Source of the DNA: Selaginella moellendorffii
Lineage: Eukaryota; Plantae; Lycopodiophyta
Assembly: GCF_000143415.4 (NCBI RefSeq)
Contig: NW_003314272.1
Coordinates: 2,257,728 to 2,321,727, forward strand
Direction of reading: 5' to 3'
Length of the DNA stretch: 64,000 bases
Made by a program: the position numbers and the translations under genes. Below, in pieces: positions 52,621-62,100 of this stretch; position 1 is the first letter of the stretch; every line of letters begins with the position of its first letter. A model generated the notes under the pieces. It was not told the origin of the DNA and made no database searches. It saw nothing but the letters and a program-made list of their open reading frames with translations.

Positions 52621-53586
52621 TGTACCGTGTTGGCCCCGCATTAGGGTTTTTTAGGTTTCACTTTACGGAACTCCGTGTTGGCGAGGACGATCAACAGAAT
52701 GAGAAATTTCATGAGAGCAAACTCGCCGAAATACAGGGCATACAGCACCTCCAAACGTTCCACACACATCTATACAGCAACGCAAGTAACTCAATCTATA
52801 CAGCAATGCATAGAAGTCTGACAAGCAACTATCTGAGTTGACAGATATGTACCATTGTTTCTTGAGGGGCTTTGTACCTGTTGTGAGCAGTTGTCACAGG
52901 AAGTAGAAAAGGAGGCTTTTATGCGCTCCCCCTTTAAACTTTCACGAGATTCTTGCGAGGGACAATAGCTGGGATGAAGTGGATAGGAAGTTTGCCCAGT
53001 ATGATGAGATGGCTGGATAGCTCAACGGGGAATGCAAGACTGACGAAGTTGGACACGGCTTTCCTAGATGCTGAAGAAGGTATAAGATATTGCTCAAGCT
53101 TTGTCAAGAGAATTTATACAGCCGAAGTGTAGTAGGATTGAAAAAGTTGAGCGGATGGGGCATAGCTAGAGTACCTGGACTTGAGAAAAATGTGCTGGCA
53201 AGCGTCATCCAGAACAATAAAGGCTTCCTTCCAACTTACTTTCAACCTTGGAAACATAAACTTTTCAGATGCTGATGGAGTGATGACGAAATTGGGAAGC
53301 TGATCATCATAGCTGTTCAATTCATAGTGAGCATTGATCTCACATCAGATCGGTAAACCAGTTTATGAGCTTCCTCTCTCTACGGAAGTGGGAACCAACA
53401 CTAGGGTAATCCACTATGCATTTGTGGGGTGTTCTACTATACAATCCAGGGAGGTGGTTTGAGACACTCCAAGACAGGGTTGGTCAATTTTCAAGCATCC
53501 TTGCTATACTAACGTATTTATCATTTAATGTAAATCTGTAAACCCTAGGCGTGGATAGGGCACAGGGCAAGGTGGGCGGGCGGGCA

Positions 53587-55540
53587 ATGGCGGCTGGGTA
53601 CGAGCGCGATGGCTATGGCGGCTACGAGGACTCTTACGACGAGCGGCCAGACGACGCGCACCCGCCCGATTACGTCCCCGACTATGTCAAGTCTTTCGTC
53701 GGCTACCTCTACCGCAGCATCCGCGAGAAGAATGTCTACGAGGTACACCAAATGTACGAGAGCAGCTTTAGCAAGCTGAGCGAGCGCTTCTTCTCCAAGT
53801 CGCACTGGCCCTCGGCGGAGCTCGTGGCGCCCTACGTCGACAACGATCACGTCTTTTGCCTCCTCTACAAGGAGATGTACTACAGGCACGTCTACGCCAA
53901 GCTCAATGTCACCTTCCAGGAGAGGCTGGAATCCTGGGACAATTACTGCAACCTCTTCACGGTCATCCTCCATGGAAACGTGAATATGCAGCTGCCCAAC
54001 CAGTGGCTCTGGGACATGGTGGACGAGTTCATCTATCAGTTCCAGGCGTTTTGCCAGTACCGGACCAAGCTCAAGAACAAGACCGAGCAGGAGCTAAGCT
54101 GGCTCAAGCAGTACGACGAACAGGTCTGGAAGCAAAGAAGCTTTCCTCAGTGTGTCACTGATTTCTTCCTTCTCGGTTTTGTTCTCGCAGGTGTGGAATG
54201 TCTATGGTGTGGCGAATTTCCTCCAGGCTCTGATTGACAAGTCGGAGATTCTGCAAGTCCTGGAGGAGGAGAAGGACGGGGCGGTGACGGCCTTCAGTGC
54301 CAACGATGGATATGACTACGAGGGTGGCAGCAACGTCCTCAAGGTCTTGGGATACTTTAGCATCATTGGGCTTGCGCGGGTGCACTGCTTGCTTGGGGAT
54401 TACCACACGGCTCTCAAGCGCCTCGCTCATATTGATCTCACGCAGCACGGAGTATACAGCTCTGTGATCGGCTGCCACATTACCGCGGCGTACTACTACG
54501 GGTTTTCGAACATGATGATGCTGAGGTGAGTTTTTCGAGCGTGAGCTCTCCTCGCTGATAAAACCTTCCTTTTGCTACCAAGGTACATCGATGCTATCAA
54601 GACTTTTAACCAGGTGCTTGTGTACATCTCCAAGACGAGGCAGTACCACCAGAAGTCGTCGCAGTTTGAATGGATCCTCAAGAAGAACGAGCAGATGTAC
54701 GCGTTGCTTGCGATCTGCCTGTGGTTCTGCCCCCAGTGGCACCTCGTAGAGTCCGAGAATGCGAGGAGCGATTCTCAGAGGAATGAGACCGTGACTCACC
54801 AGCTCAAGGAGAAGCGTGGGGAGAAGTTATCCAAGATGCACAAGAATGACGAGGCCGCTTTTGACGAGTGTTTCTCGTACGCTTGCCCGAAGTTTATCTC
54901 TCCATCGCTACCTGACTTGAGTGACACCTCTGGAAACTACAGCCAGGTAAGTGTGTCCTTTTTTCGTATCTTTTCAGTTCTAAGCGGGCACCTGGAATCC
55001 ACAGGAAGCATACAGGCTGCAGTTGAAGCTCTTTCTATCTGAAGTCCGACAGCAGCAGCTCCTGAACAAGATCAGAAACTACGTGAAGCTTTACACCACG
55101 ATATCTATTGCAAAGCTAGCCTCGCTTGTGGAGGTAGACGAAGCCACGCTGAGGTAGCTTGTATTTCGTTTGTCTTCTTGCGTTCTCAGCACTTAAGACT
55201 TGGCAGGATGGCTTTGATGACTTACAAGCACAAGACTCACTACATTGACGACGATGGCAGCGTAGCATCTACCGCGGACGTCGAGTTCTACATTGACGAG
55301 GTTGGGATTTGCTTGCTCGCTTGATTCTCACTCATCAGAGAGCTCAAATCTCTTCTTTATCTTTCGTCCAGGATGTTGTACACATAGCAGAGCCGAAAGT
55401 TACCAAGCGTTTTAGCGAGATCTTTGTCCGCCACATTCTCAAGGTAATGCTCTCAAGAATTTAGCTCTTTCTCTTTTAACACCATGGTTTCGCAGTTCGA
55501 CGAATTGGTTGGGGACCTGGAGCGTGTCGCACTAGAGTGA
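53587..55540 (+). CDS. eIF3L: Eukaryotic translation initiation factor 3 subunit L, multi-exon
   Basis: LYKEMYYRHVY, ESWDNYCNLF, LPNQWLWDMVDEFIYQFQ, LGYFSIIGL.RVHCLLGDY, FSYACPKFI. Telo-box AAACCCTA at ~53540. Confidence 0.95.
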
Positions 55541-55674: not shown

Positions 55675-56724
55675 ATGGAGGTGATACCGGTGCCTTGTTT
55701 GGACGACAATTACGCCTATCTGTAAGCTCTCGAGAGTGAGTGCTTTGACGAAAGTTCCCTGGATTGATTGATCAGGATAATCGATGGAGCGAGCAAGCAG
55801 GCAGCGGCGGTTGATCCCGTGAAACCCGAGAGCGTTTTATCGGCAGCCAAGAAGCATGGAGCCCAAGTGACCATGGTTCTCACCACCCACAAGCACTGGT
55901 AGAGCTAGCTTTCCATTCTTTCCTCCGCAAGAAAGCTTTTCTACCAGGGACCACGCTGGAGGTAACAACGAGATCAAGAAGCTCGTCCCAGGGATCAAAG
56001 TCTTCGGTGGTGCCAAGGATAATGTGGAAGGCTGCACGGATCCTCTGGAGCACGGAGCGGAGCTTGAGCTGTCCAAGGATGTGAAGATCAAGGCCCTCCA
56101 CACTCCATGGTAAAATGTCCTCTCTTTTCTTCTCGTCTGTGATGCTGAGAGAGCTGCTCTTGGCATTCGTAGCCATACCAAGGGCCATATCAGCTACTTT
56201 GTCACCCACAAGTCTGGAGATCCTGCCGTCTTTACTGGCGACACTCTGGTACTTCCTGTCTTTTCTTTCTTGGTAGTCTTAGAATTTGCGCTGCGCAGTT
56301 CGTCGCCGGCTGTGGCAAGTTCTTCGAAGGCAAAGCTCAGGATATGTACCACTCTCTGTCCGAAGTTCTAGCCGAGTTGCCTCCGGCTACTCGAGTCTTC
56401 TGCGGACACGAGGTCTGTCTTCCACTTCTTGTATACTTTCCGTCTCTCAGCGTTTCGAATCCACCCTTGCAGTATACCGCCAAGAACTTGAAGTTCGCCA
56501 TGTCTGTCGATCCCCACAATGATGCTCTTAAGCAGAAGGTTGCCTGGACGGAAGAGCAGCGTCGGAATCACAAGCCTACGGTCCCGTCAACCATCCGAGA
56601 GGAGCTCCAGACCAATCCCTTCATGCGTGTTAACGTGAAGGAGTTCCAAGTCCATATGGGAGAGAGCGATCCGGTTGAGCTGCTGGCGTCGTTGAGAGCC
56701 GCCAAGGATCAGTTTAAAGGCTAG
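55675..56724 (+). CDS. GLX2-2: Cytosolic glyoxalase II (hydroxyacylglutathione hydrolase), multi-exon
   Basis: VPCLDDNYAYL, TTHKHWDHAGGN, TP.HTKGH, FTGDTLF.AGCGKFFEG, CGHEY, E..TNPFMR. Confidence 0.95.
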
Positions 56725-56778
56725 CTCCCTCTGTCTGGATCCTTGAGATGATAAATGATAAGTTGGCTTCCTCGAAAC

Positions 56779-59700
56779 TTATTCTTCCGGAACGTCGATG
56801 TGGATTTCTTGCTTGCCAGTGGCAACCATCTCGATGGCAGCTAAAAGCTTGCGAATCTCAAAAGGCTTCCCCATGTAACTGTCCATTCCCGCTGAAAAAC
56901 ATGTATCCTCGTATCCACGCATGGCATGCGCTGTTAACCCGATTATGGGCATTTTTCTCAGACCATCCCTGGCTTCCTGTTCCCGTATTCTACGAGTTGC
57001 TTCCAATCCATCCATGATCGGCATCTGGAAAGAAGACTTGAAACTGGAAACTTGGAAAAGAACAAGCTACCTGGATGTCCATGAGGATCAAATCAATGTT
57101 GTCCCGGTTTGCGTCCACGGCCGCTATCGCTTGGACTCCATCCCCCACAACGGTCACAATGTGGCCATGCTTTTGGAGGAGTCTAGACGCAACCTTCTGA
57201 TTCACAAGGTTGTCCTCCACCAAGAGTATGCGCTTGGTTACGTCAACCGATATTTCTGCCTCTTGTACAATGCTCGGGTCCTTGACGCTTAGAGTGACTT
57301 CTTCTTTCGGAGTCACAGGGCTGGGAGCTTGCTGAGTGCCATCCTTGGCGACCATGACGCGGGAAGTCGTATCGTCCGTAGATTCCCGAGGTGCCGGGGC
57401 TTCGTGACCATCTGCATCTGAGCTTACGACTTCAGTACTAACAGGTTTTCCCTGCGTAGTCTCGGCTCCTACACAAACCAGAATACTTATAAGTTGCCTA
57501 TACAAAAAATACGTACTTTGAGAAGTCACGGAGGCAGCTGTTGCGAAGAAACCAGATGCTTCCTGGGCAGCGCCCTCCTTGTTCAAGAGGTAAGGCAAAA
57601 CGATGTAAAAACTACTGCCTTTTCCATATTCGCTTTCCACCAGTATGTGACCTCCCATCAGCTCTACAAATCTGCAAAATCGCCGCAGCTGTTAACGAGT
57701 TTGAAGTCAGCTGCAGTTTCCTTATTAGCCAGATTGTTCTTAGAAAAACCAAAACTTACCTCTGTACCACGCAGAGACCGAGTCCTGTTCCACCATATAA
57801 GCGAGAAATCGAAGCATCCGCTTGAGTGAAGGGCTTGAAGACATCCTTGAGCTTGTTTTTGCTGATGCCAATCCCACTATCCGATATCTTGTAAAGAATG
57901 GTCACTTCGTCGGCTGACCCCCGGTTGGTAAACTTGGTGTGAGCTTGCGTGTGTTGAGGCATGAAAAGGTTTCTCGTCTCTGTAACTTCCAGCATCATTT
58001 CTAACATGTCTGACCACTGAGAGGCGTTAAGTCTCGATAGAACCGAATCGTCTTGCATTCCGAACCTGTGAACCGAAACCTCAACTCGGACCTCGCCATC
58101 GGGTGTGAATTTCAGAGCATTTCCAACTGCACGGAGGATCAGAGTTAGTTGCTCACTGTGTATACCACCGCCTCACCTAAGTTCAACAGGCACTGCCTCA
58201 ACTTTCCCGAGTCCCCGACCAGAAACTCGGGCACAGCGCTGTCGATTTCATAGCTCAGCCGAAGGTTGTGTGCCTGCGCACGCGGCTGTAGAATGTGCAC
58301 AGTGCTCTTCAGGACGTGATGAAGATTAAAAGATATCAACTCCACTTCAAAACGGCCAGCCTCGATTTTCCCCAGGTCCAAAATGCTGTTGATGATATGC
58401 AGGAGCAACTCGGCACACTCGCTGACGGTGGTCATGTTCTCCTTCTGCTCATCTGTGAGAGAAGTTCCAAGCACCAACGCTGACATTCCAAGTATTCCGT
58501 GAATAGGAGTTCTGTACAGGAAAAACAAAGTATGTTAAGGCACTGCGAAAAAAGAACGAGACGAATAATCAAACCTGATCTCATGACTCATGTTGGCAAG
58601 GAAATCGGACTTGGCTTGGCTCGCCAGTTCTGCTGCTTGCTTCGACGTCTGTAACTCTTCATTTGCCTTGACGAGCTGATGCGTTCTCTGGAGCACTAAA
58701 CTTTCAAGCTCCTCATTGAGCTTCTCAAGCTTTTTAGCTAATTGATGCTTCTCCCTGACAGCAGCCGCAAGTGACACAGCTACAGCTGAGCTAACAGATA
58801 CAAAAAGCTCTACCTGCATGACAATCCGCGGTTCCACGGTTGGGCCACCTCCAGAGATATTGTAGAGAGCACCCTTCTTTTTCACGGTCGACCAAGTGCA
58901 AAACAGGGAGATCCCGCACAAGATGAAGGCCCATCCCATCCGGTTGAAGCGGAAAGCACTGTAGACGATGACTGGAAAGAGAAGATAAGGCAGCGGCTTC
59001 ACGTACGTAGGAATGACGAGCGTGTAGACTGTTATCAGCAGCAGCACGGTGATGAACCCGACCAAAAAAATCTCCACAATCTTCCCCGGCCTAAACATCC
59101 CCGGCTTGGGCTGCCACACGAAGCTGTGGAGAACGAAAGGTGACACCGTGATGGAGGCAGCTACCACACCCAGCCACCATGTTGCCCAGCAGATTGTAAA
59201 CTCCTTCCACGGCACCATGCGCCCGACACACTCGATCAAAGCTATGGTTGCCTCGAAAGGTGCCGAGAGAAAGCAGGTGACGAGGAAGTACCACAGAGCA
59301 TCCCCAAGTGATTCGATCGTCGGTATCAGCCTGGTCTCGGAGCACAAAAATCTACGCACCATCCAGCTGCAAAAGTGGACCTCGAGCGTCCTGAGAGTAG
59401 CAGCCCCCAAAAGAACCACCGACTTCAAGAAATTCAGGCCTTCCGCGCCCCTGTCCGTGAAGTAGAGCCTGACGCCGAAGAGCCCAGCAAAGTTTCCCAG
59501 GAGAACGAAGCATCCTTTCTTGCAAGCCACTGCGAAGCCCACCGCATGAGGGAGATAGAGTGGGAAGACGATCACCTTGACGATTTGCTTCTGGAGCGGT
59601 GGTGCCGACATCTCAAACGTTGCTGCCCCGAGCGCGATCTCCAGCGCCGTCAATCCCAGGTTCCAGGCCAGGAAAGACGCCAGGCATCGCGGGCGCTTGA

Positions 59701-59806
59701 CATGAGCCACGATGCATTTGAAGGAACTGGCAGCAAATCCCTGAGCGCGAGAAGCTGCACTGGAGCACAGATCCTGGATATCAATCAGCCCCCGACCATT
59801 GGCCAT
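56779..59806 (-). CDS. Hybrid histidine kinase with N-terminal MASE1-like multi-TM sensor, HisKA, HATPase and receiver domains
   Basis: MASE1-like YLPHAVGFA, WWLGVVA..TVSPFVL, LLFPVIVYSAFRF. H-box FLANMSHEIR|TPIHGILG, N-box LRQCLLNL, G boxes DSGIGI and GGTGLGL. Receiver LLVEDNLVNQ..LILMDIQMP. Confidence 0.9.
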
Positions 59807-60126
59807 AATCTTCACCCTGGCATCCTTCTCTGGCACTGCCTCAATCCAAGGAGAGCTAATCCCCCACCCGCATTCTCTGCCTTGCGAGACAATCGCGGCC
59901 GCTCTAGCGCGCGATCCGCCAATCGCACCAGCGGTGGAATCCAGCGAGCGATGGAGGGATCATCGCGATCATACCTGGGCGGAGAATCGAGAAACCCTAG
60001 CACACGTCCTTAGGGCTTCGCGAGAAGACGATGCGACCAAGATTTTTCGGTTCGAATGGTTTAACGGATACATAGCTTCGCGGTTTTCTTTCTTCTAAAA
60101 GAATGGAGGGCTAGAATCTCGCCTAT

Positions 60127-62100
60127 CTAGCGGCGCATACGCTCGGCAATAATCCTCAATCCCATATACCTGGAAGACCAATCACATCAAAGAAAAAACG
60201 AATATCTCACTTACCTTCCCAGCATCATGACCGTCGCTTGCGGGTTCGTACCGGGCGAGAAGTTAAACGTGGAGCCGTCGATGACGCGCAGCGCATCAAC
60301 GCCTAACACGTGGTAGTCGCTGTCCACGACTCTGCCCACCTGGCAGCCACCGTGGTAGTGCCAGATTGTCTGTACGGTCGACCTGCAGAAGCTGGCCAGC
60401 GTGACATTGACCGACGACCGGAGCGTTGAATCCGCGCGGACCGGCGATGCCACCGTCCCGCCCGAGGGAAGAGCTTGGGCGTCGTAGCGAAAGCGGCGCA
60501 TGGAGCTGGAGAGGATGATCTCCTCGATCTGGTTGATCCCTTCCACGCAGCTCTGGAGATCTTCCGGGTCCTGGAAGTAATTGAAGGTGACCTGGGGATT
60601 GTCCGCGGCGTCGAGCGAGGTGAGCGTCATCTGGCCGCTCGATCTGGGGCCGATCACCTTCTCGAGCAGCACGCCCGCGCTCAATCCATCGAGCTCGCCG
60701 CTGCCCGCCTCGATGAAGCTGCCGTAGTGCGTGATCCCGACCACCTGGATGAGGCTCGTCTCCACGGGCGCGGGCGAGAGGAGGTAGACGGTGTTCATGG
60801 GGTTGTCCGCCATGCCCTGGCCGACGCCTGGGAGATTGACGAGCACGCGGATGCCCATGCTCTCGAGGTGCGCGCGCGGCCCGATGCCATTGAGCATCAG
60901 CAGCTGGGGGCTGCCCATGGCGCCCGCGGACAGGATCACCTGGCTCTGGCGATTGGAATTGAGGCGCGCGATGTGCATCCGGCTGTTGGCATCGCGGTAT
61001 TGGACCCCGATCGCGCGCGGCTGGTAACCTACACACACGACGATCCGGCCGAGAAGAGAAAGATAGTAAAATAAGAAAACAGGGGATCCCAACTGGAGCG
61101 CAAGAAATTCGAGAAAATCTGAGAGATCGGGCTTCGGTGGCTCACGCCAATCGCAGAGAATCGAGGAGGAGTTATCGAATCAATCGAATCGATCGGACAG
61201 AGAGAAAGAAGTCGATGACAACAAGTGGAGAAATTTACCTGAGGTGTCGAAGAGGATCCTCTGGACGCTGGCGCGGAGGAGCACGAGTATATTCCTGGCG
61301 GTGGCGTAGCGGAGGAGGTCGGCGGCGGTGTGGCGGTTGCCCTGATGGTCGAAGATCGACCCCCCAGTCTTGGTCCCATAGATGTGATCGAAAGTGGCGC
61401 CATTGTCCGGCGTCACCCCGGTCTCCAGCAGCCCCGCCCTAAATGCGCTCTGGAACGCTCCCAGCTGCGGCACGAACGCCACCACTCTCTCCACCCACGG
61501 ATACGACTGGTTAACCAGGCGCGCATCCCAGCCAACCCTGCGCACGTAGTCGGGGCTGGCGCGCGTGTAGAAGCCAGCGTTGAGGCAGCTACCACCGCCC
61601 AGGACGCGCGGGCGAGTGTTGCGAACGCCGTCGGTGGACGTGAAGGCCTGCGCGGGCGTGAATTGCCCCTCGGTGTCGTTGAGGCTGCGCCCAAAGTTCT
61701 CGATGCGCGTGATGTTGGCGTTGCCATAGGGCGAGGGGCCGCGCTCCAGGACGAGGACGCGGAAGTAGCGGGAGAGCGTCGCCGCCAGAGGGCAGCCGGC
61801 GGTGCCGCCGCCCACGATGATGTAGTCGTACTGCTCGTACACCGGGGAGTCGGCGGCGTCGCGGAGGAACGAGTAGGGATAGGTCTCGTCGGCGCCCATC
61901 CCTGCGCGCGCGCGAGGAAGAAGAAGAAGAAGATTCAAGAGAAAACATTTTAAAAATTGCGCGAAAGATTGGGGCGATCGATCGATCGATCATCCAATCT
62001 CGCTTCTTTTTTTCTTACCTGGCGCGATCATCAGCGCCAGCAGCAGCACCAGCGCGGAGCTTTGCATCGTGGATTTCTGCCGGGATTGGAGGATTCTCAT
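60127..62100 (-). CDS. HTH: HOTHEAD-like GMC oxidoreductase (signal peptide, 4 exons)
   Basis: YDYIIVGGGTAGCPLAATLS, RVLGGGSCLNAGFY, TIWHYHGGCQVG, SPGTNPQATVMMLGRY. Confidence 0.93.

What the first reader, a model, noticed from the sequence alone, without database searches (positions are those of the whole stretch)
56779..59806. Intact bacterial-style MASE1-sensor hybrid histidine kinase in a land plant
Seen: a single large exon encodes many hydrophobic helices with MASE1-like signatures and a coiled coil, followed by spliced HisKA, HATPase and receiver domains with the phospho-His and phospho-Asp intact. I see no CHASE, ethylene-binding, GAF or PAS domain. Established: MASE1 is mainly a bacterial membrane sensor, and this architecture is not among the Arabidopsis AHK/ETR/CKI receptors. 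Inference: a two-component receptor for an unknown signal, retained in early-diverging plants or acquired horizontally.
Basis: partly seen in the sequence, partly recalled or inferred. Interest (0 to 1): 0.8.

Follow-up and report, generated by a model that had tools for sequence, protein, structure and literature searches.

The report
Known plant MASE1 histidine kinase gene
This is a real, expressed spikemoss gene for a membrane sensor kinase of bacterial type; the class was already described in non-flowering plants and its signal is still unknown, and here the main messenger RNAs stop before the end of the kinase.

Summary
A minus-strand gene (CDS 59806-56779) encodes MASE1 (Pfam 44 bits, cut-off 29.8), a coiled coil, HisKA, HATPase_c and a receiver, with His408 and Asp827 intact. 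No CHASE, PAS, GAF or ethylene-binding domain is present.

It is not new. The window is Selaginella moellendorffii and the gene is RefSeq LOC9651264. MASE1 histidine kinases of P. patens, M. polymorpha and S. moellendorffii are in the literature (Ishida 2010, as cited by Kabbara 2019), and Marchantia has a gene named MpMASE1.

What I add:
1. Transcript contigs from four studies confirm five introns. At intron 3, however, all four use upstream acceptors that put a stop after the G2 box (652- or 645-aa products, identical to RefSeq X1 and X2). The acceptor needed for the receiver-bearing 910-aa protein was seen in no contig.
2. MASE1 domains of streptophytes form one clade against 49 presumed bacterial (metagenomic) sequences (100/98). 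It holds two land-plant subfamilies, plus Closterium and gymnosperms (Ginkgo, Cryptomeria, Taxus). This is old vertical descent, not recent transfer.
3. The first ~200 residues of MASE1 model as an ECF-transporter S-component fold (Z 14.8).

Function remains unknown.

The parts
56640..60033 (-). Transcribed region of the MASE1 histidine kinase gene (S. moellendorffii LOC9651264)
   Evidence: The contig of run X1 spans 56640-60033 with the introns removed, and an adapter follows its 5' end at 60033. Contigs of other runs run on into the neighbouring genes.
58575..59806 (-). Exon 1: N-terminus, MASE1 domain, signalling coiled coil and first half of the H box
   Evidence: ORF. MASE1 scores 44 bits against a cut-off of 29.8. 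The donor at 58574 is confirmed by the joint 58511|58575 in 4 of 4 runs.
58751..59701 (-). MASE1 membrane domain (residues 36-352), with 8-10 predicted transmembrane helices
   Evidence: AlphaFold2 model, pLDDT 92.9. TM-scores of 0.70-0.79 to bacterial MASE1 clusters. The conserved W-x-T-W-W-x-G, P223, E245, R286 and E352 are shared with the presumed bacterial MASE1 sequences.
59102..59701 (-). N-terminal half of MASE1 (residues 36-235), modelled with an ECF S-component-like fold
   Evidence: Isolated model, pLDDT 94.1. In VIA-align the top 14 of 48,161 chains are all ECF S-components or CbiM-type. The best is 4hzu_S, Z 14.8, rmsd 3.1, 158 of 164 residues; the next unrelated chain has Z 7.8. 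Foldseek gives prob 0.89-0.97 and TM 0.5-0.6 for the same chains, though its E-values are poor.
58583..58585 (-). Codon of the phospho-acceptor His408 (H box SHEIRTP)
58177..58511 (-). Exon 2: rest of HisKA/DHp and start of the N box
   Evidence: HisKA 42 bits. Joints 58511|58575 and 58126|58177 are seen in 4 of 4 runs.
57760..58126 (-). Exon 3: HATPase_c N, G1, F and G2 boxes
   Evidence: HATPase_c 36.8 bits. Motif coordinates.
57672..57759 (-). Intron 3 with three tandem acceptors. The 49-nt form ends at 57711 and the 71-nt form at 57689; both create a stop. The 88-nt form ends at 57672 and is the only one that keeps the frame.
   Evidence: Joints 57688|57760 (X1, X9; X6 with a SNP) and 57710|57760 (X2); no contig uses 57672. 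The translations stop at 652 or 645 aa. They are identical to RefSeq XP_024529548.1 and XP_024529549.1.
57071..57671 (-). Exon 4a (57671-57517), a 48-nt intron (57516-57469) and exon 4b (57468-57071): end of HATPase_c, the linker and the first half of the receiver
   Evidence: The joint 57467|57516 (cut +1) is seen in 4 of 4 runs. Response_reg 29 bits. This part is in frame only with the 88-nt form of intron 3.
57077..57079 (-). Codon of the receiver phospho-acceptor Asp827 (LILMDIQ)
56779..57024 (-). Exon 5: second half of the receiver, and the stop codon
   Evidence: Response_reg 44.7 bits. The joint 57024|57071 is seen in 4 of 4 runs.

Best explanation
This is a genuine nuclear gene of Selaginella moellendorffii (RefSeq LOC9651264). 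It belongs to subfamily A of the streptophyte MASE1-domain hybrid histidine kinases, a class already described but never functionally characterised.

Shown:
- The gene has five GT-AG introns of 46-88 nt.
- It is transcribed and spliced in four independent data sets.
- It encodes a MASE1 membrane domain joined by one long helix (residues 326-409 in the model) directly to the H box.
- With the 88-nt form of intron 3 it also encodes a complete HATPase_c domain and a receiver with all key residues.

Inferred mechanism, from established two-component biochemistry:
- A signal perceived within or at the membrane by MASE1 shifts the continuous signalling helix.
- This changes autophosphorylation of His408.
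- The phosphoryl group passes to Asp827 of the receiver, then to HPt proteins and response regulators.

Inferred from structure prediction: the first ~200 residues of MASE1 have the fold of ECF-transporter S-components, which bind small molecules inside the membrane. A small membrane-accessible ligand is therefore a reasonable candidate signal. Partner-protein input, as reported for E. coli DgcE, is the alternative.

Qualification: the abundant mRNAs of this copy use upstream acceptors in intron 3. They encode 652- or 645-aa products that end after the G2 box, without the last ~29 positions of the ATPase profile and without the receiver. The full-length kinase is therefore at best a minor isoform in the sampled material.
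For: Gene model and motifs. Pfam domains above cut-off.

Spliced contigs from four studies confirm introns 1, 2, 4 and 5 exactly.

Identity with RefSeq isoforms X1 and X2 of S. moellendorffii LOC9651264.

Class in the literature: PMC6324907. 'Protein MpMASE1' in Marchantia.

Careful ML tree of 289 MASE1 columns and 79 rows: streptophytes are one clade (100/98), subfamily A 100/100 and subfamily B 100/99, and the branching follows plant phylogeny.

Plant gene neighbours (glyoxalase II, GMC oxidoreductase, eIF3L-like).

AlphaFold2 models with pLDDT 92.9 and 94.1. Match to bacterial MASE1 models, TM 0.70-0.79.

S-component fold: Z 12.5 on the whole model and 14.8 on the isolated domain, with the top 11-14 hits all from one family. 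Foldseek prob 0.89-0.97.

The receiver is as conserved as the other domains against the 51%-identical paralog: 53% over 162 residues.
Against: - No assembled transcript uses the acceptor at 57672 that the full-length protein needs. All four contig sets, and RefSeq X1 and X2, carry a premature stop.
- RefSeq X3, the only model with the receiver, also contains two skips that no contig shows.
- No experiment on any plant MASE1 kinase was found in the searchable literature.
- The S-component resemblance rests on predicted models of a helical bundle. Sequence identity is 8-13%, no Pfam hit to S-component families appears, and Foldseek E-values are 0.5-1.5.
- In E. coli DgcE, the MASE1 domain takes input from a partner GTPase rather than a known ligand (PMC6510439).
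Confidence: 0.8

Rival explanations
1. This Selaginella copy is mainly a truncated, non-catalytic product or an unproductively spliced gene. Either the 652/645-aa MASE1-DHp protein acts as a regulator, for example by pairing with the paralog's kinase, or the messages are simply degraded. In both cases the copy is drifting away from receptor function.
For: - In 4 of 4 transcript contig sets from four studies, intron 3 is spliced to acceptors at 57689 or 57711, giving stops after 652 or 645 aa.
- RefSeq lists these as isoforms X1 and X2 on both haplotypes.
- The X1 product covers only positions 36-82 of 111 of the HATPase_c profile.
- A second subfamily-A gene (LOC9634821) with a receiver exists in the same genome.
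Against: - The downstream frame is open for 258 codons. All receiver key residues are present, and it is 53% identical to the paralog, like the rest of the protein.
- Contigs drop minor isoforms, so the productive form may still exist (tool note).
- The paralog also has an AG 16 nt upstream of its productive acceptor, yet it is annotated as full-length.
Confidence: 0.3
2. MASE1 here is not a ligand sensor. It is a membrane anchor and docking platform that takes its input from a partner protein, as DgcE MASE1 does from RdcA. The S-component resemblance would then be only a shared helix arrangement.
For: - In DgcE, the MASE1 domain is needed for membrane location, turnover and interaction with the GTPase RdcA (PMC6510439).
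- In YfgF, MASE1 function depends on a cytoplasmic-loop motif (PMC3718329).
- Foldseek E-values for S-components are not significant.
Against: - In the isolated-domain search, the top 14 of 48,161 chains all belong to one transporter-subunit family and cover 150-180 residues. The score then falls from Z 8.8 to 7.8 and below.
- The related case of LytS-type kinases with an S-component fold is reported to bind pyruvate (PMC11109136).
- Conserved polar and aromatic residues lie inside the membrane helices.
Confidence: 0.35
3. The gene is a bacterial contaminant or a recent horizontal acquisition from bacteria.
For: MASE1 is overwhelmingly bacterial: the nearest ESM Atlas clusters are 95-100% Bacteria. 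The first exon is long.
Against: - Five spliceosomal introns are removed in transcripts.
- The gene is flanked by, and overlaps in transcripts with, ordinary plant genes.
- The best presumed bacterial (metagenomic) matches are only 20-26% identical in MASE1, against 34-56% for plant relatives.
- The streptophyte clade has 100/98 support and follows the species tree.
- The intron inside the H box also marks the end of truncated models in Taxus and Diphasiastrum.
Confidence: 0.02

Closest known systems
MASE1-domain hybrid histidine kinases of non-flowering plants (Ishida et al. 2010 as cited by Kabbara et al. 2019; Marchantia 'MpMASE1')
   Same: Same architecture: MASE1, HisKA, HATPase_c, receiver. 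Same organism set, since S. moellendorffii is named in Kabbara 2019. Same clade in my tree.
   Different: The window gene belongs to subfamily A, which is separate from the MpMASE1 subfamily B (100/100 and 100/99). Subfamily B carries a ~200-residue insert inside MASE1. This copy's main mRNAs are truncated.
Bacterial MASE1 sensors: DgcE, PdeF/YfgF and PdeA of E. coli and Salmonella, and MASE1 histidine kinases in metagenomes
   Same: Same Pfam family and predicted fold (TM 0.70-0.79). Shared W-x-T-W-W-x-G, Pro, Glu and Arg-Phe signature.
   Different: Only 20-26% identity in MASE1. Plant subfamily A replaces the Asp after WWLG (86% of the presumed bacterial sequences) with Val and has its own conserved residues (N49, E65, R113, H227, N288). 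The output is a eukaryotic phosphorelay rather than c-di-GMP enzymes.
ECF-transporter S-components (RibU, ThiT, BioY, FolT, BtuM, PanT) and the S-component-fold LytS-type (5TMR-LYT) kinases such as BtsS
   Same: The predicted fold of MASE1 residues 36-235 superposes on whole S-components (Z 9.3-14.8, rmsd 3.1-4.3, 151-182 residues). A membrane S-component fold fused to a histidine kinase is the arrangement described for 5TMR-LYT kinases (PMC11109136).
   Different: There is no detectable sequence relationship (8-13% identity, no Pfam hit). MASE1 has further helices after this module. No ECF module or transport role is implied. That paper never uses the word MASE1.
Arabidopsis-type receptors AHK2/3/4 (CHASE), ETR/ERS, AHK1, CKI1, AHK5
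   Same: Same class I kinase core and receiver. The best solved-structure matches include plant and fungal hybrid kinase cores and the AHK4 and AHK5 receivers.
   Different: No CHASE, ethylene-binding, PAS or GAF domain. No angiosperm member was found in any search.

Membership tests
Streptophyte MASE1-domain hybrid histidine kinases | N-terminal MASE1 domain (PF05231) above Pfam's gathering score | tested here: met
   44.0 bits against 29.8 on exon 1. 42-42.6 bits on the RefSeq products.
Streptophyte MASE1-domain hybrid histidine kinases | HisKA with the conserved His, and HATPase_c with N, G1, F and G2 boxes | tested here: met
   Caveat: the end of HATPase_c is encoded only if the acceptor at 57672 is used.
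Streptophyte MASE1-domain hybrid histidine kinases | C-terminal receiver with the phospho-acceptor Asp present in the expressed protein | tested here: inconclusive
   The receiver is intact in the genome (Asp827, Thr, Lys) and in RefSeq X3 (87.7 bits). It lies downstream of a premature stop in all four assembled transcript sets.
Streptophyte MASE1-domain hybrid histidine kinases | Groups with plant MASE1 kinases rather than bacterial ones | tested here: met
   Careful ML tree: streptophyte clade 100/98, subfamily A 100/100. The nearest row is the S. moellendorffii paralog, followed by Diphasiastrum.
Pfam MASE1 (PF05231) | Multi-pass membrane domain of about 300 residues (8-10 helices) with the conserved Trp-rich motif | tested here: met
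   The model has 9 helices between residues 39 and 352. W207-x-T-W-W-x-G, P223, E245, R286 and E352 are conserved in 70 sequences.
ECF S-component fold (structural class) | Six-helix membrane fold that superposes on solved S-components | tested here: met
   Z 14.8, rmsd 3.1, 158 of 164 residues. The top 14 hits all belong to this family. Foldseek prob 0.89-0.97. Predicted model only.
ECF S-component fold (structural class) | Sequence-level homology to S-component families | tested here: not met
   No Pfam hit other than MASE1 and HisKA at E<=1. 8-13% identity in the structural alignments.
ECF S-component fold (structural class) | Binds a small substrate in the membrane-embedded pocket | not testable with these tools
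   Needs binding assays or an experimental structure.
Cytokinin (CHASE) and ethylene receptor histidine kinases | CHASE domain, or the three-helix ethylene-binding domain with GAF | tested here: not met
   No such Pfam hit at E<=1 on any exon.
LytS-type 5TMR-LYT histidine kinases | PF07694 membrane domain | tested here: not met
   No PF07694 hit. Only the general S-component-like fold is shared.

The most novel reading that the evidence does not exclude
MASE1, whose structure and signal are unknown, would be built on an ECF S-component-type ligand-binding module. Plant MASE1 kinases, kept from zygnematophyte algae to gymnosperms and lost in flowering plants, would then be receptors for a small membrane-accessible metabolite. 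In Selaginella, output would be set by choice among three tandem acceptors in intron 3, which switches between a full kinase and a truncated MASE1-DHp decoy lacking the end of the ATPase domain and the receiver.
Probability: 0.2. Interest if true: 0.65.

Novelty: already known. Interest (0 to 1): 0.3.

Why it matters
The gene itself is a catalogued member of a published class, so it adds little. The class matters for two reasons. It is an orphan two-component receptor family kept across more than 500 million years of plant evolution and apparently lost only in flowering plants. No signal is known for MASE1 in any organism.

Three results here make it easier to work on:
- A high-confidence model links the first half of MASE1 to the small-molecule-binding S-component fold, which gives a pocket to mutate and a ligand-screen rationale.
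- The family has two old subfamilies and reaches into gymnosperms and Closterium. This corrects the published 'early-diverging land plants only' range and widens the choice of model species (Marchantia, Physcomitrium).
- The Selaginella copy is mostly spliced to a truncated form. Anyone cloning it from cDNA should expect this.

Tried and rejected
- Sequence search of solved structures with exon 1 matched only the coiled coil and H box.
- Foldseek against the PDB gave no E<=0.001 hit with either the whole 410-residue model or the isolated domain. The S-component link came from VIA-align and from Foldseek's prob and TM columns.
- An H-box pattern used to cut MASE1 regions lost most of the presumed bacterial rows, which carry other output domains. 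I replaced it with an HMM built in two rounds.
- The look-up of encoding contigs found nothing for P0001. P0151 gave the paralog locus L001.
- The supplement of Kabbara 2019 is not held, so I could not get the authors' name for this gene.
- Searches for 'MpMASE1' and for functional work on plant MASE1 kinases returned nothing.
- I could not pass the spliced 910-aa model to the database tools because it has no reference. I used exon translations and the RefSeq isoforms P0191 and P0192 instead.
- Contamination and recent transfer were considered and rejected (see rivals).
- I did not try to infer the bacterial donor. Only the 150 best hits were available and most carry no taxon label.
Full report
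**What is there.** On the minus strand, a long ORF (59836-58535) is followed by four shorter ORFs that carry histidine-kinase and receiver motifs. Reading the sequence, I joined them with GT-AG introns into one frame.

Pfam on the exon translations gave:
- MASE1 PF05231 at 44.0 bits against a gathering score of 29.8, covering profile 28-298 of 299.
- HisKA, split by intron 1 inside the H box.
- HATPase_c.
- Response_reg in two pieces.

Nothing else reached E<=1, so there is no CHASE, PAS, GAF or ethylene-binding domain. His408 (58585-58583), the N, G1, F and G2 boxes, and receiver Asp827 (57079-57077), Thr and Lys are all present.

**Whose gene it is.** The introns are 46-88 nt, as in Selaginella. 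An exhaustive HMMER search with exon 1, followed by cluster look-ups, showed two exact matches:
- My translation with a 71-nt intron 3 is identical to XP_024529548.1 (LOC9651264 isoform X1, 652 aa).
- The one with a 49-nt intron 3 is identical to XP_024529549.1 (X2, 645 aa).

Both are from Selaginella moellendorffii. The second haplotype's allele, LOC9655983, differs at four residues. Neighbouring genes are ordinary plant genes: glyoxalase II (convergent), a GMC oxidoreductase upstream, and an eIF3L/Paf67-like gene.

**Is it expressed, and as what.** Contigs of four runs from four studies were laid on 56400-60300. All four remove introns 1 (58574-58512), 2 (58176-58127) and the last (57070-57025). 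All four also remove a 48-nt in-frame intron (57516-57469) that I had only suspected. The gene is therefore transcribed and spliced, and the full product would be 910 aa.

Intron 3 behaves differently. Three runs join 57760 to 57688 (a 71-nt intron) and one joins 57760 to 57710 (49 nt). Neither keeps the frame. The products end after the G2 box at 652 or 645 aa and cover only positions 36-82 of 111 of the HATPase_c profile. No contig uses the acceptor at 57672 (88-nt intron), which is needed for the end of the ATPase domain and the receiver.

RefSeq's only receiver-bearing model (X3, 798 aa) uses that acceptor, but it also contains two skips that no contig shows. Contigs drop minor isoforms, so the productive form is not excluded. 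The downstream frame is open, and it is as conserved against the paralog as the rest of the protein (53% over 162 residues). This argues that the region has been under selection. The paralog also has an AG 16 nt upstream of its productive acceptor.

**What is known.** Kabbara et al. [quoted passage not shown] 2010)'. [quoted passage not shown] GenBank has 'protein MpMASE1' for Marchantia. A 2026 paper on zygnematophytes annotates PF05231 in its histidine-kinase tree. I found no functional study of a plant member. The class, and this species' membership of it, are therefore already known.

**Family and origin.** Searches and look-ups found relatives in:
- lycophytes (Selaginella, Diphasiastrum);
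- liverworts (Marchantia, Riccia, Calypogeia);
- mosses (Physcomitrium, Ceratodon, Sphagnum);
- a hornwort (Nothoceros);
- ferns (Adiantum, Ceratopteris, Pteridium, Psilotum);
- the zygnematophyte Closterium, where the model is chimeric but holds MASE1-HisKA-HATPase;
- gymnosperms: Ginkgo Gb_14276 (all four domains), Cryptomeria SUGI_0000330 (all four domains precomputed) and a partial Taxus protein on a 995-Mb record.

No angiosperm appeared.

A careful maximum-likelihood tree of 289 MASE1 columns for 79 rows puts all streptophyte rows in one clade (100/98) against 49 metagenomic rows that I take to be bacterial. Few of these rows carry a taxon label. Inside the clade are the Closterium pair, subfamily A (100/100; the window gene, its Selaginella paralog, Diphasiastrum and bryophytes) and subfamily B (100/99; MpMASE1, a third Selaginella gene LOC9644652, mosses, ferns and gymnosperms). 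Gymnosperms are sister to ferns, as in the species tree. A quick tree of 162 rows agrees.

In the MASE1 region, the presumed bacterial sequences are 20-26% identical to the window protein, against 34-56% for plant relatives. This pattern is old vertical descent, with an A/B duplication before land plants diverged. It is not recent transfer. The published range should be widened to gymnosperms and at least one zygnematophyte. The original source (bacterial or cyanobacterial) cannot be placed with these data.

**How it may work.** AlphaFold2 on exon 1 with 70 aligned sequences gave pLDDT 92.9. The model shows nine membrane helices between residues 39 and 352. The last runs without a break into an 84-residue helix (326-409) that ends at the H box, so there is no HAMP or PAS between the membrane and the kinase. 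The model matches bacterial MASE1 models at TM 0.70-0.79.

Foldseek found no solved relative. VIA-align against 48,161 chains placed eleven ECF-transporter S-components on top, covering residues ~31-234 (Z 12.5 down to 8.4). I refolded residues 36-235 alone (pLDDT 94.1) and searched again. The top 14 chains were all S-components or CbiM-type. The best was 4hzu_S (Z 14.8, rmsd 3.1, 158 of 164 residues), and the next unrelated chain had Z 7.8. Foldseek gave those chains prob 0.89-0.97 and TM 0.5-0.6, although with poor E-values.

A 2024 paper reports the S-component fold in LytS-type kinases, which bind pyruvate, and in MreD. It never mentions MASE1 (PMC11109136). The resemblance suggests a membrane-embedded small-molecule site. 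It is a prediction on a helical bundle without sequence support, so I treat it as a lead.

Bacterial work offers the alternative. DgcE's MASE1 takes input from the GTPase RdcA and governs turnover (PMC6510439). YfgF's MASE1 acts through a cytoplasmic loop (PMC3718329).

The steps from His408 to Asp827 to HPt and response regulators are inferred from established two-component biochemistry. They were not tested here.

**Verdict.** The architecture and expression are right, and 'retained' is right. 'Acquired horizontally' is wrong for any recent time, and the finding is not novel. The added points of modest interest are the truncating splice choice, the wider taxonomic range and the S-component-like fold. 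An earlier first-reader note of this scan (s1-398899, 3028 letters on another piece of the same genome) probably describes the other haplotype's allele.

Noticed in passing
window 57672-57759: Intron 3 has three tandem AG acceptors (57711, 57689, 57672). All four transcript contig sets use one of the two upstream, frame-breaking ones. RefSeq lists the resulting 652- and 645-aa products as isoforms X1 and X2.
   Followed up: partly
P0219 (Ginkgo Gb_14276), P0226 (Cryptomeria SUGI_0000330), P0017 (Taxus KAH9327791.1, partial): Gymnosperms carry subfamily-B MASE1 hybrid histidine kinases that branch as sister to the fern genes. [quoted passage not shown] No angiosperm member was found.
   Followed up: partly
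P0031 (Closterium sp. NIES-65, 2774 aa) and P0029 (Closterium sp. Yama58-4): A zygnematophyte alga has a MASE1-HisKA-HATPase gene. The deposited model is chimeric: a Ser/Thr kinase lies in front, and retroelement Gag/Pol pieces lie between HisKA and HATPase_c.
   Followed up: partly
L001:3930-4130 (S. moellendorffii paralog LOC9634821): The paralog has the same intron position after the G2 box and also carries TTAACAG 16 nt upstream of its productive CAG acceptor. The potential for a frame-breaking upstream acceptor is therefore shared.
   Followed up: no
window 56471-56779: The 3' ends of the kinase gene (minus strand) and of the convergent glyoxalase II gene (HAGH_C; plus strand, stop at 56724) overlap. 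Contigs of three runs run from one gene into the other.
   Followed up: no
window 60167-61938: A GMC oxidoreductase gene lies on the minus strand directly upstream. One run's contig joins it to the kinase 5' UTR and shows a 45-nt intron (60167-60211).
   Followed up: no
window 59823-59972: The 227-nt 5' UTR (60033-59807) holds four upstream ATGs. They open short out-of-frame ORFs of 22/19 aa (nested, sharing one stop), 5 aa and 3 aa.
   Followed up: no
window 53551-55042: Exons of an eIF3 subunit L / Paf67-like gene lie on the plus strand.
   Followed up: no
subfamily B proteins, e.g. P0016:30-539: In subfamily B (MpMASE1 type) the MASE1 profile matches in two stretches, separated by an insert of about 200 residues between the S-component-like half and the remaining helices.
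   Followed up: no
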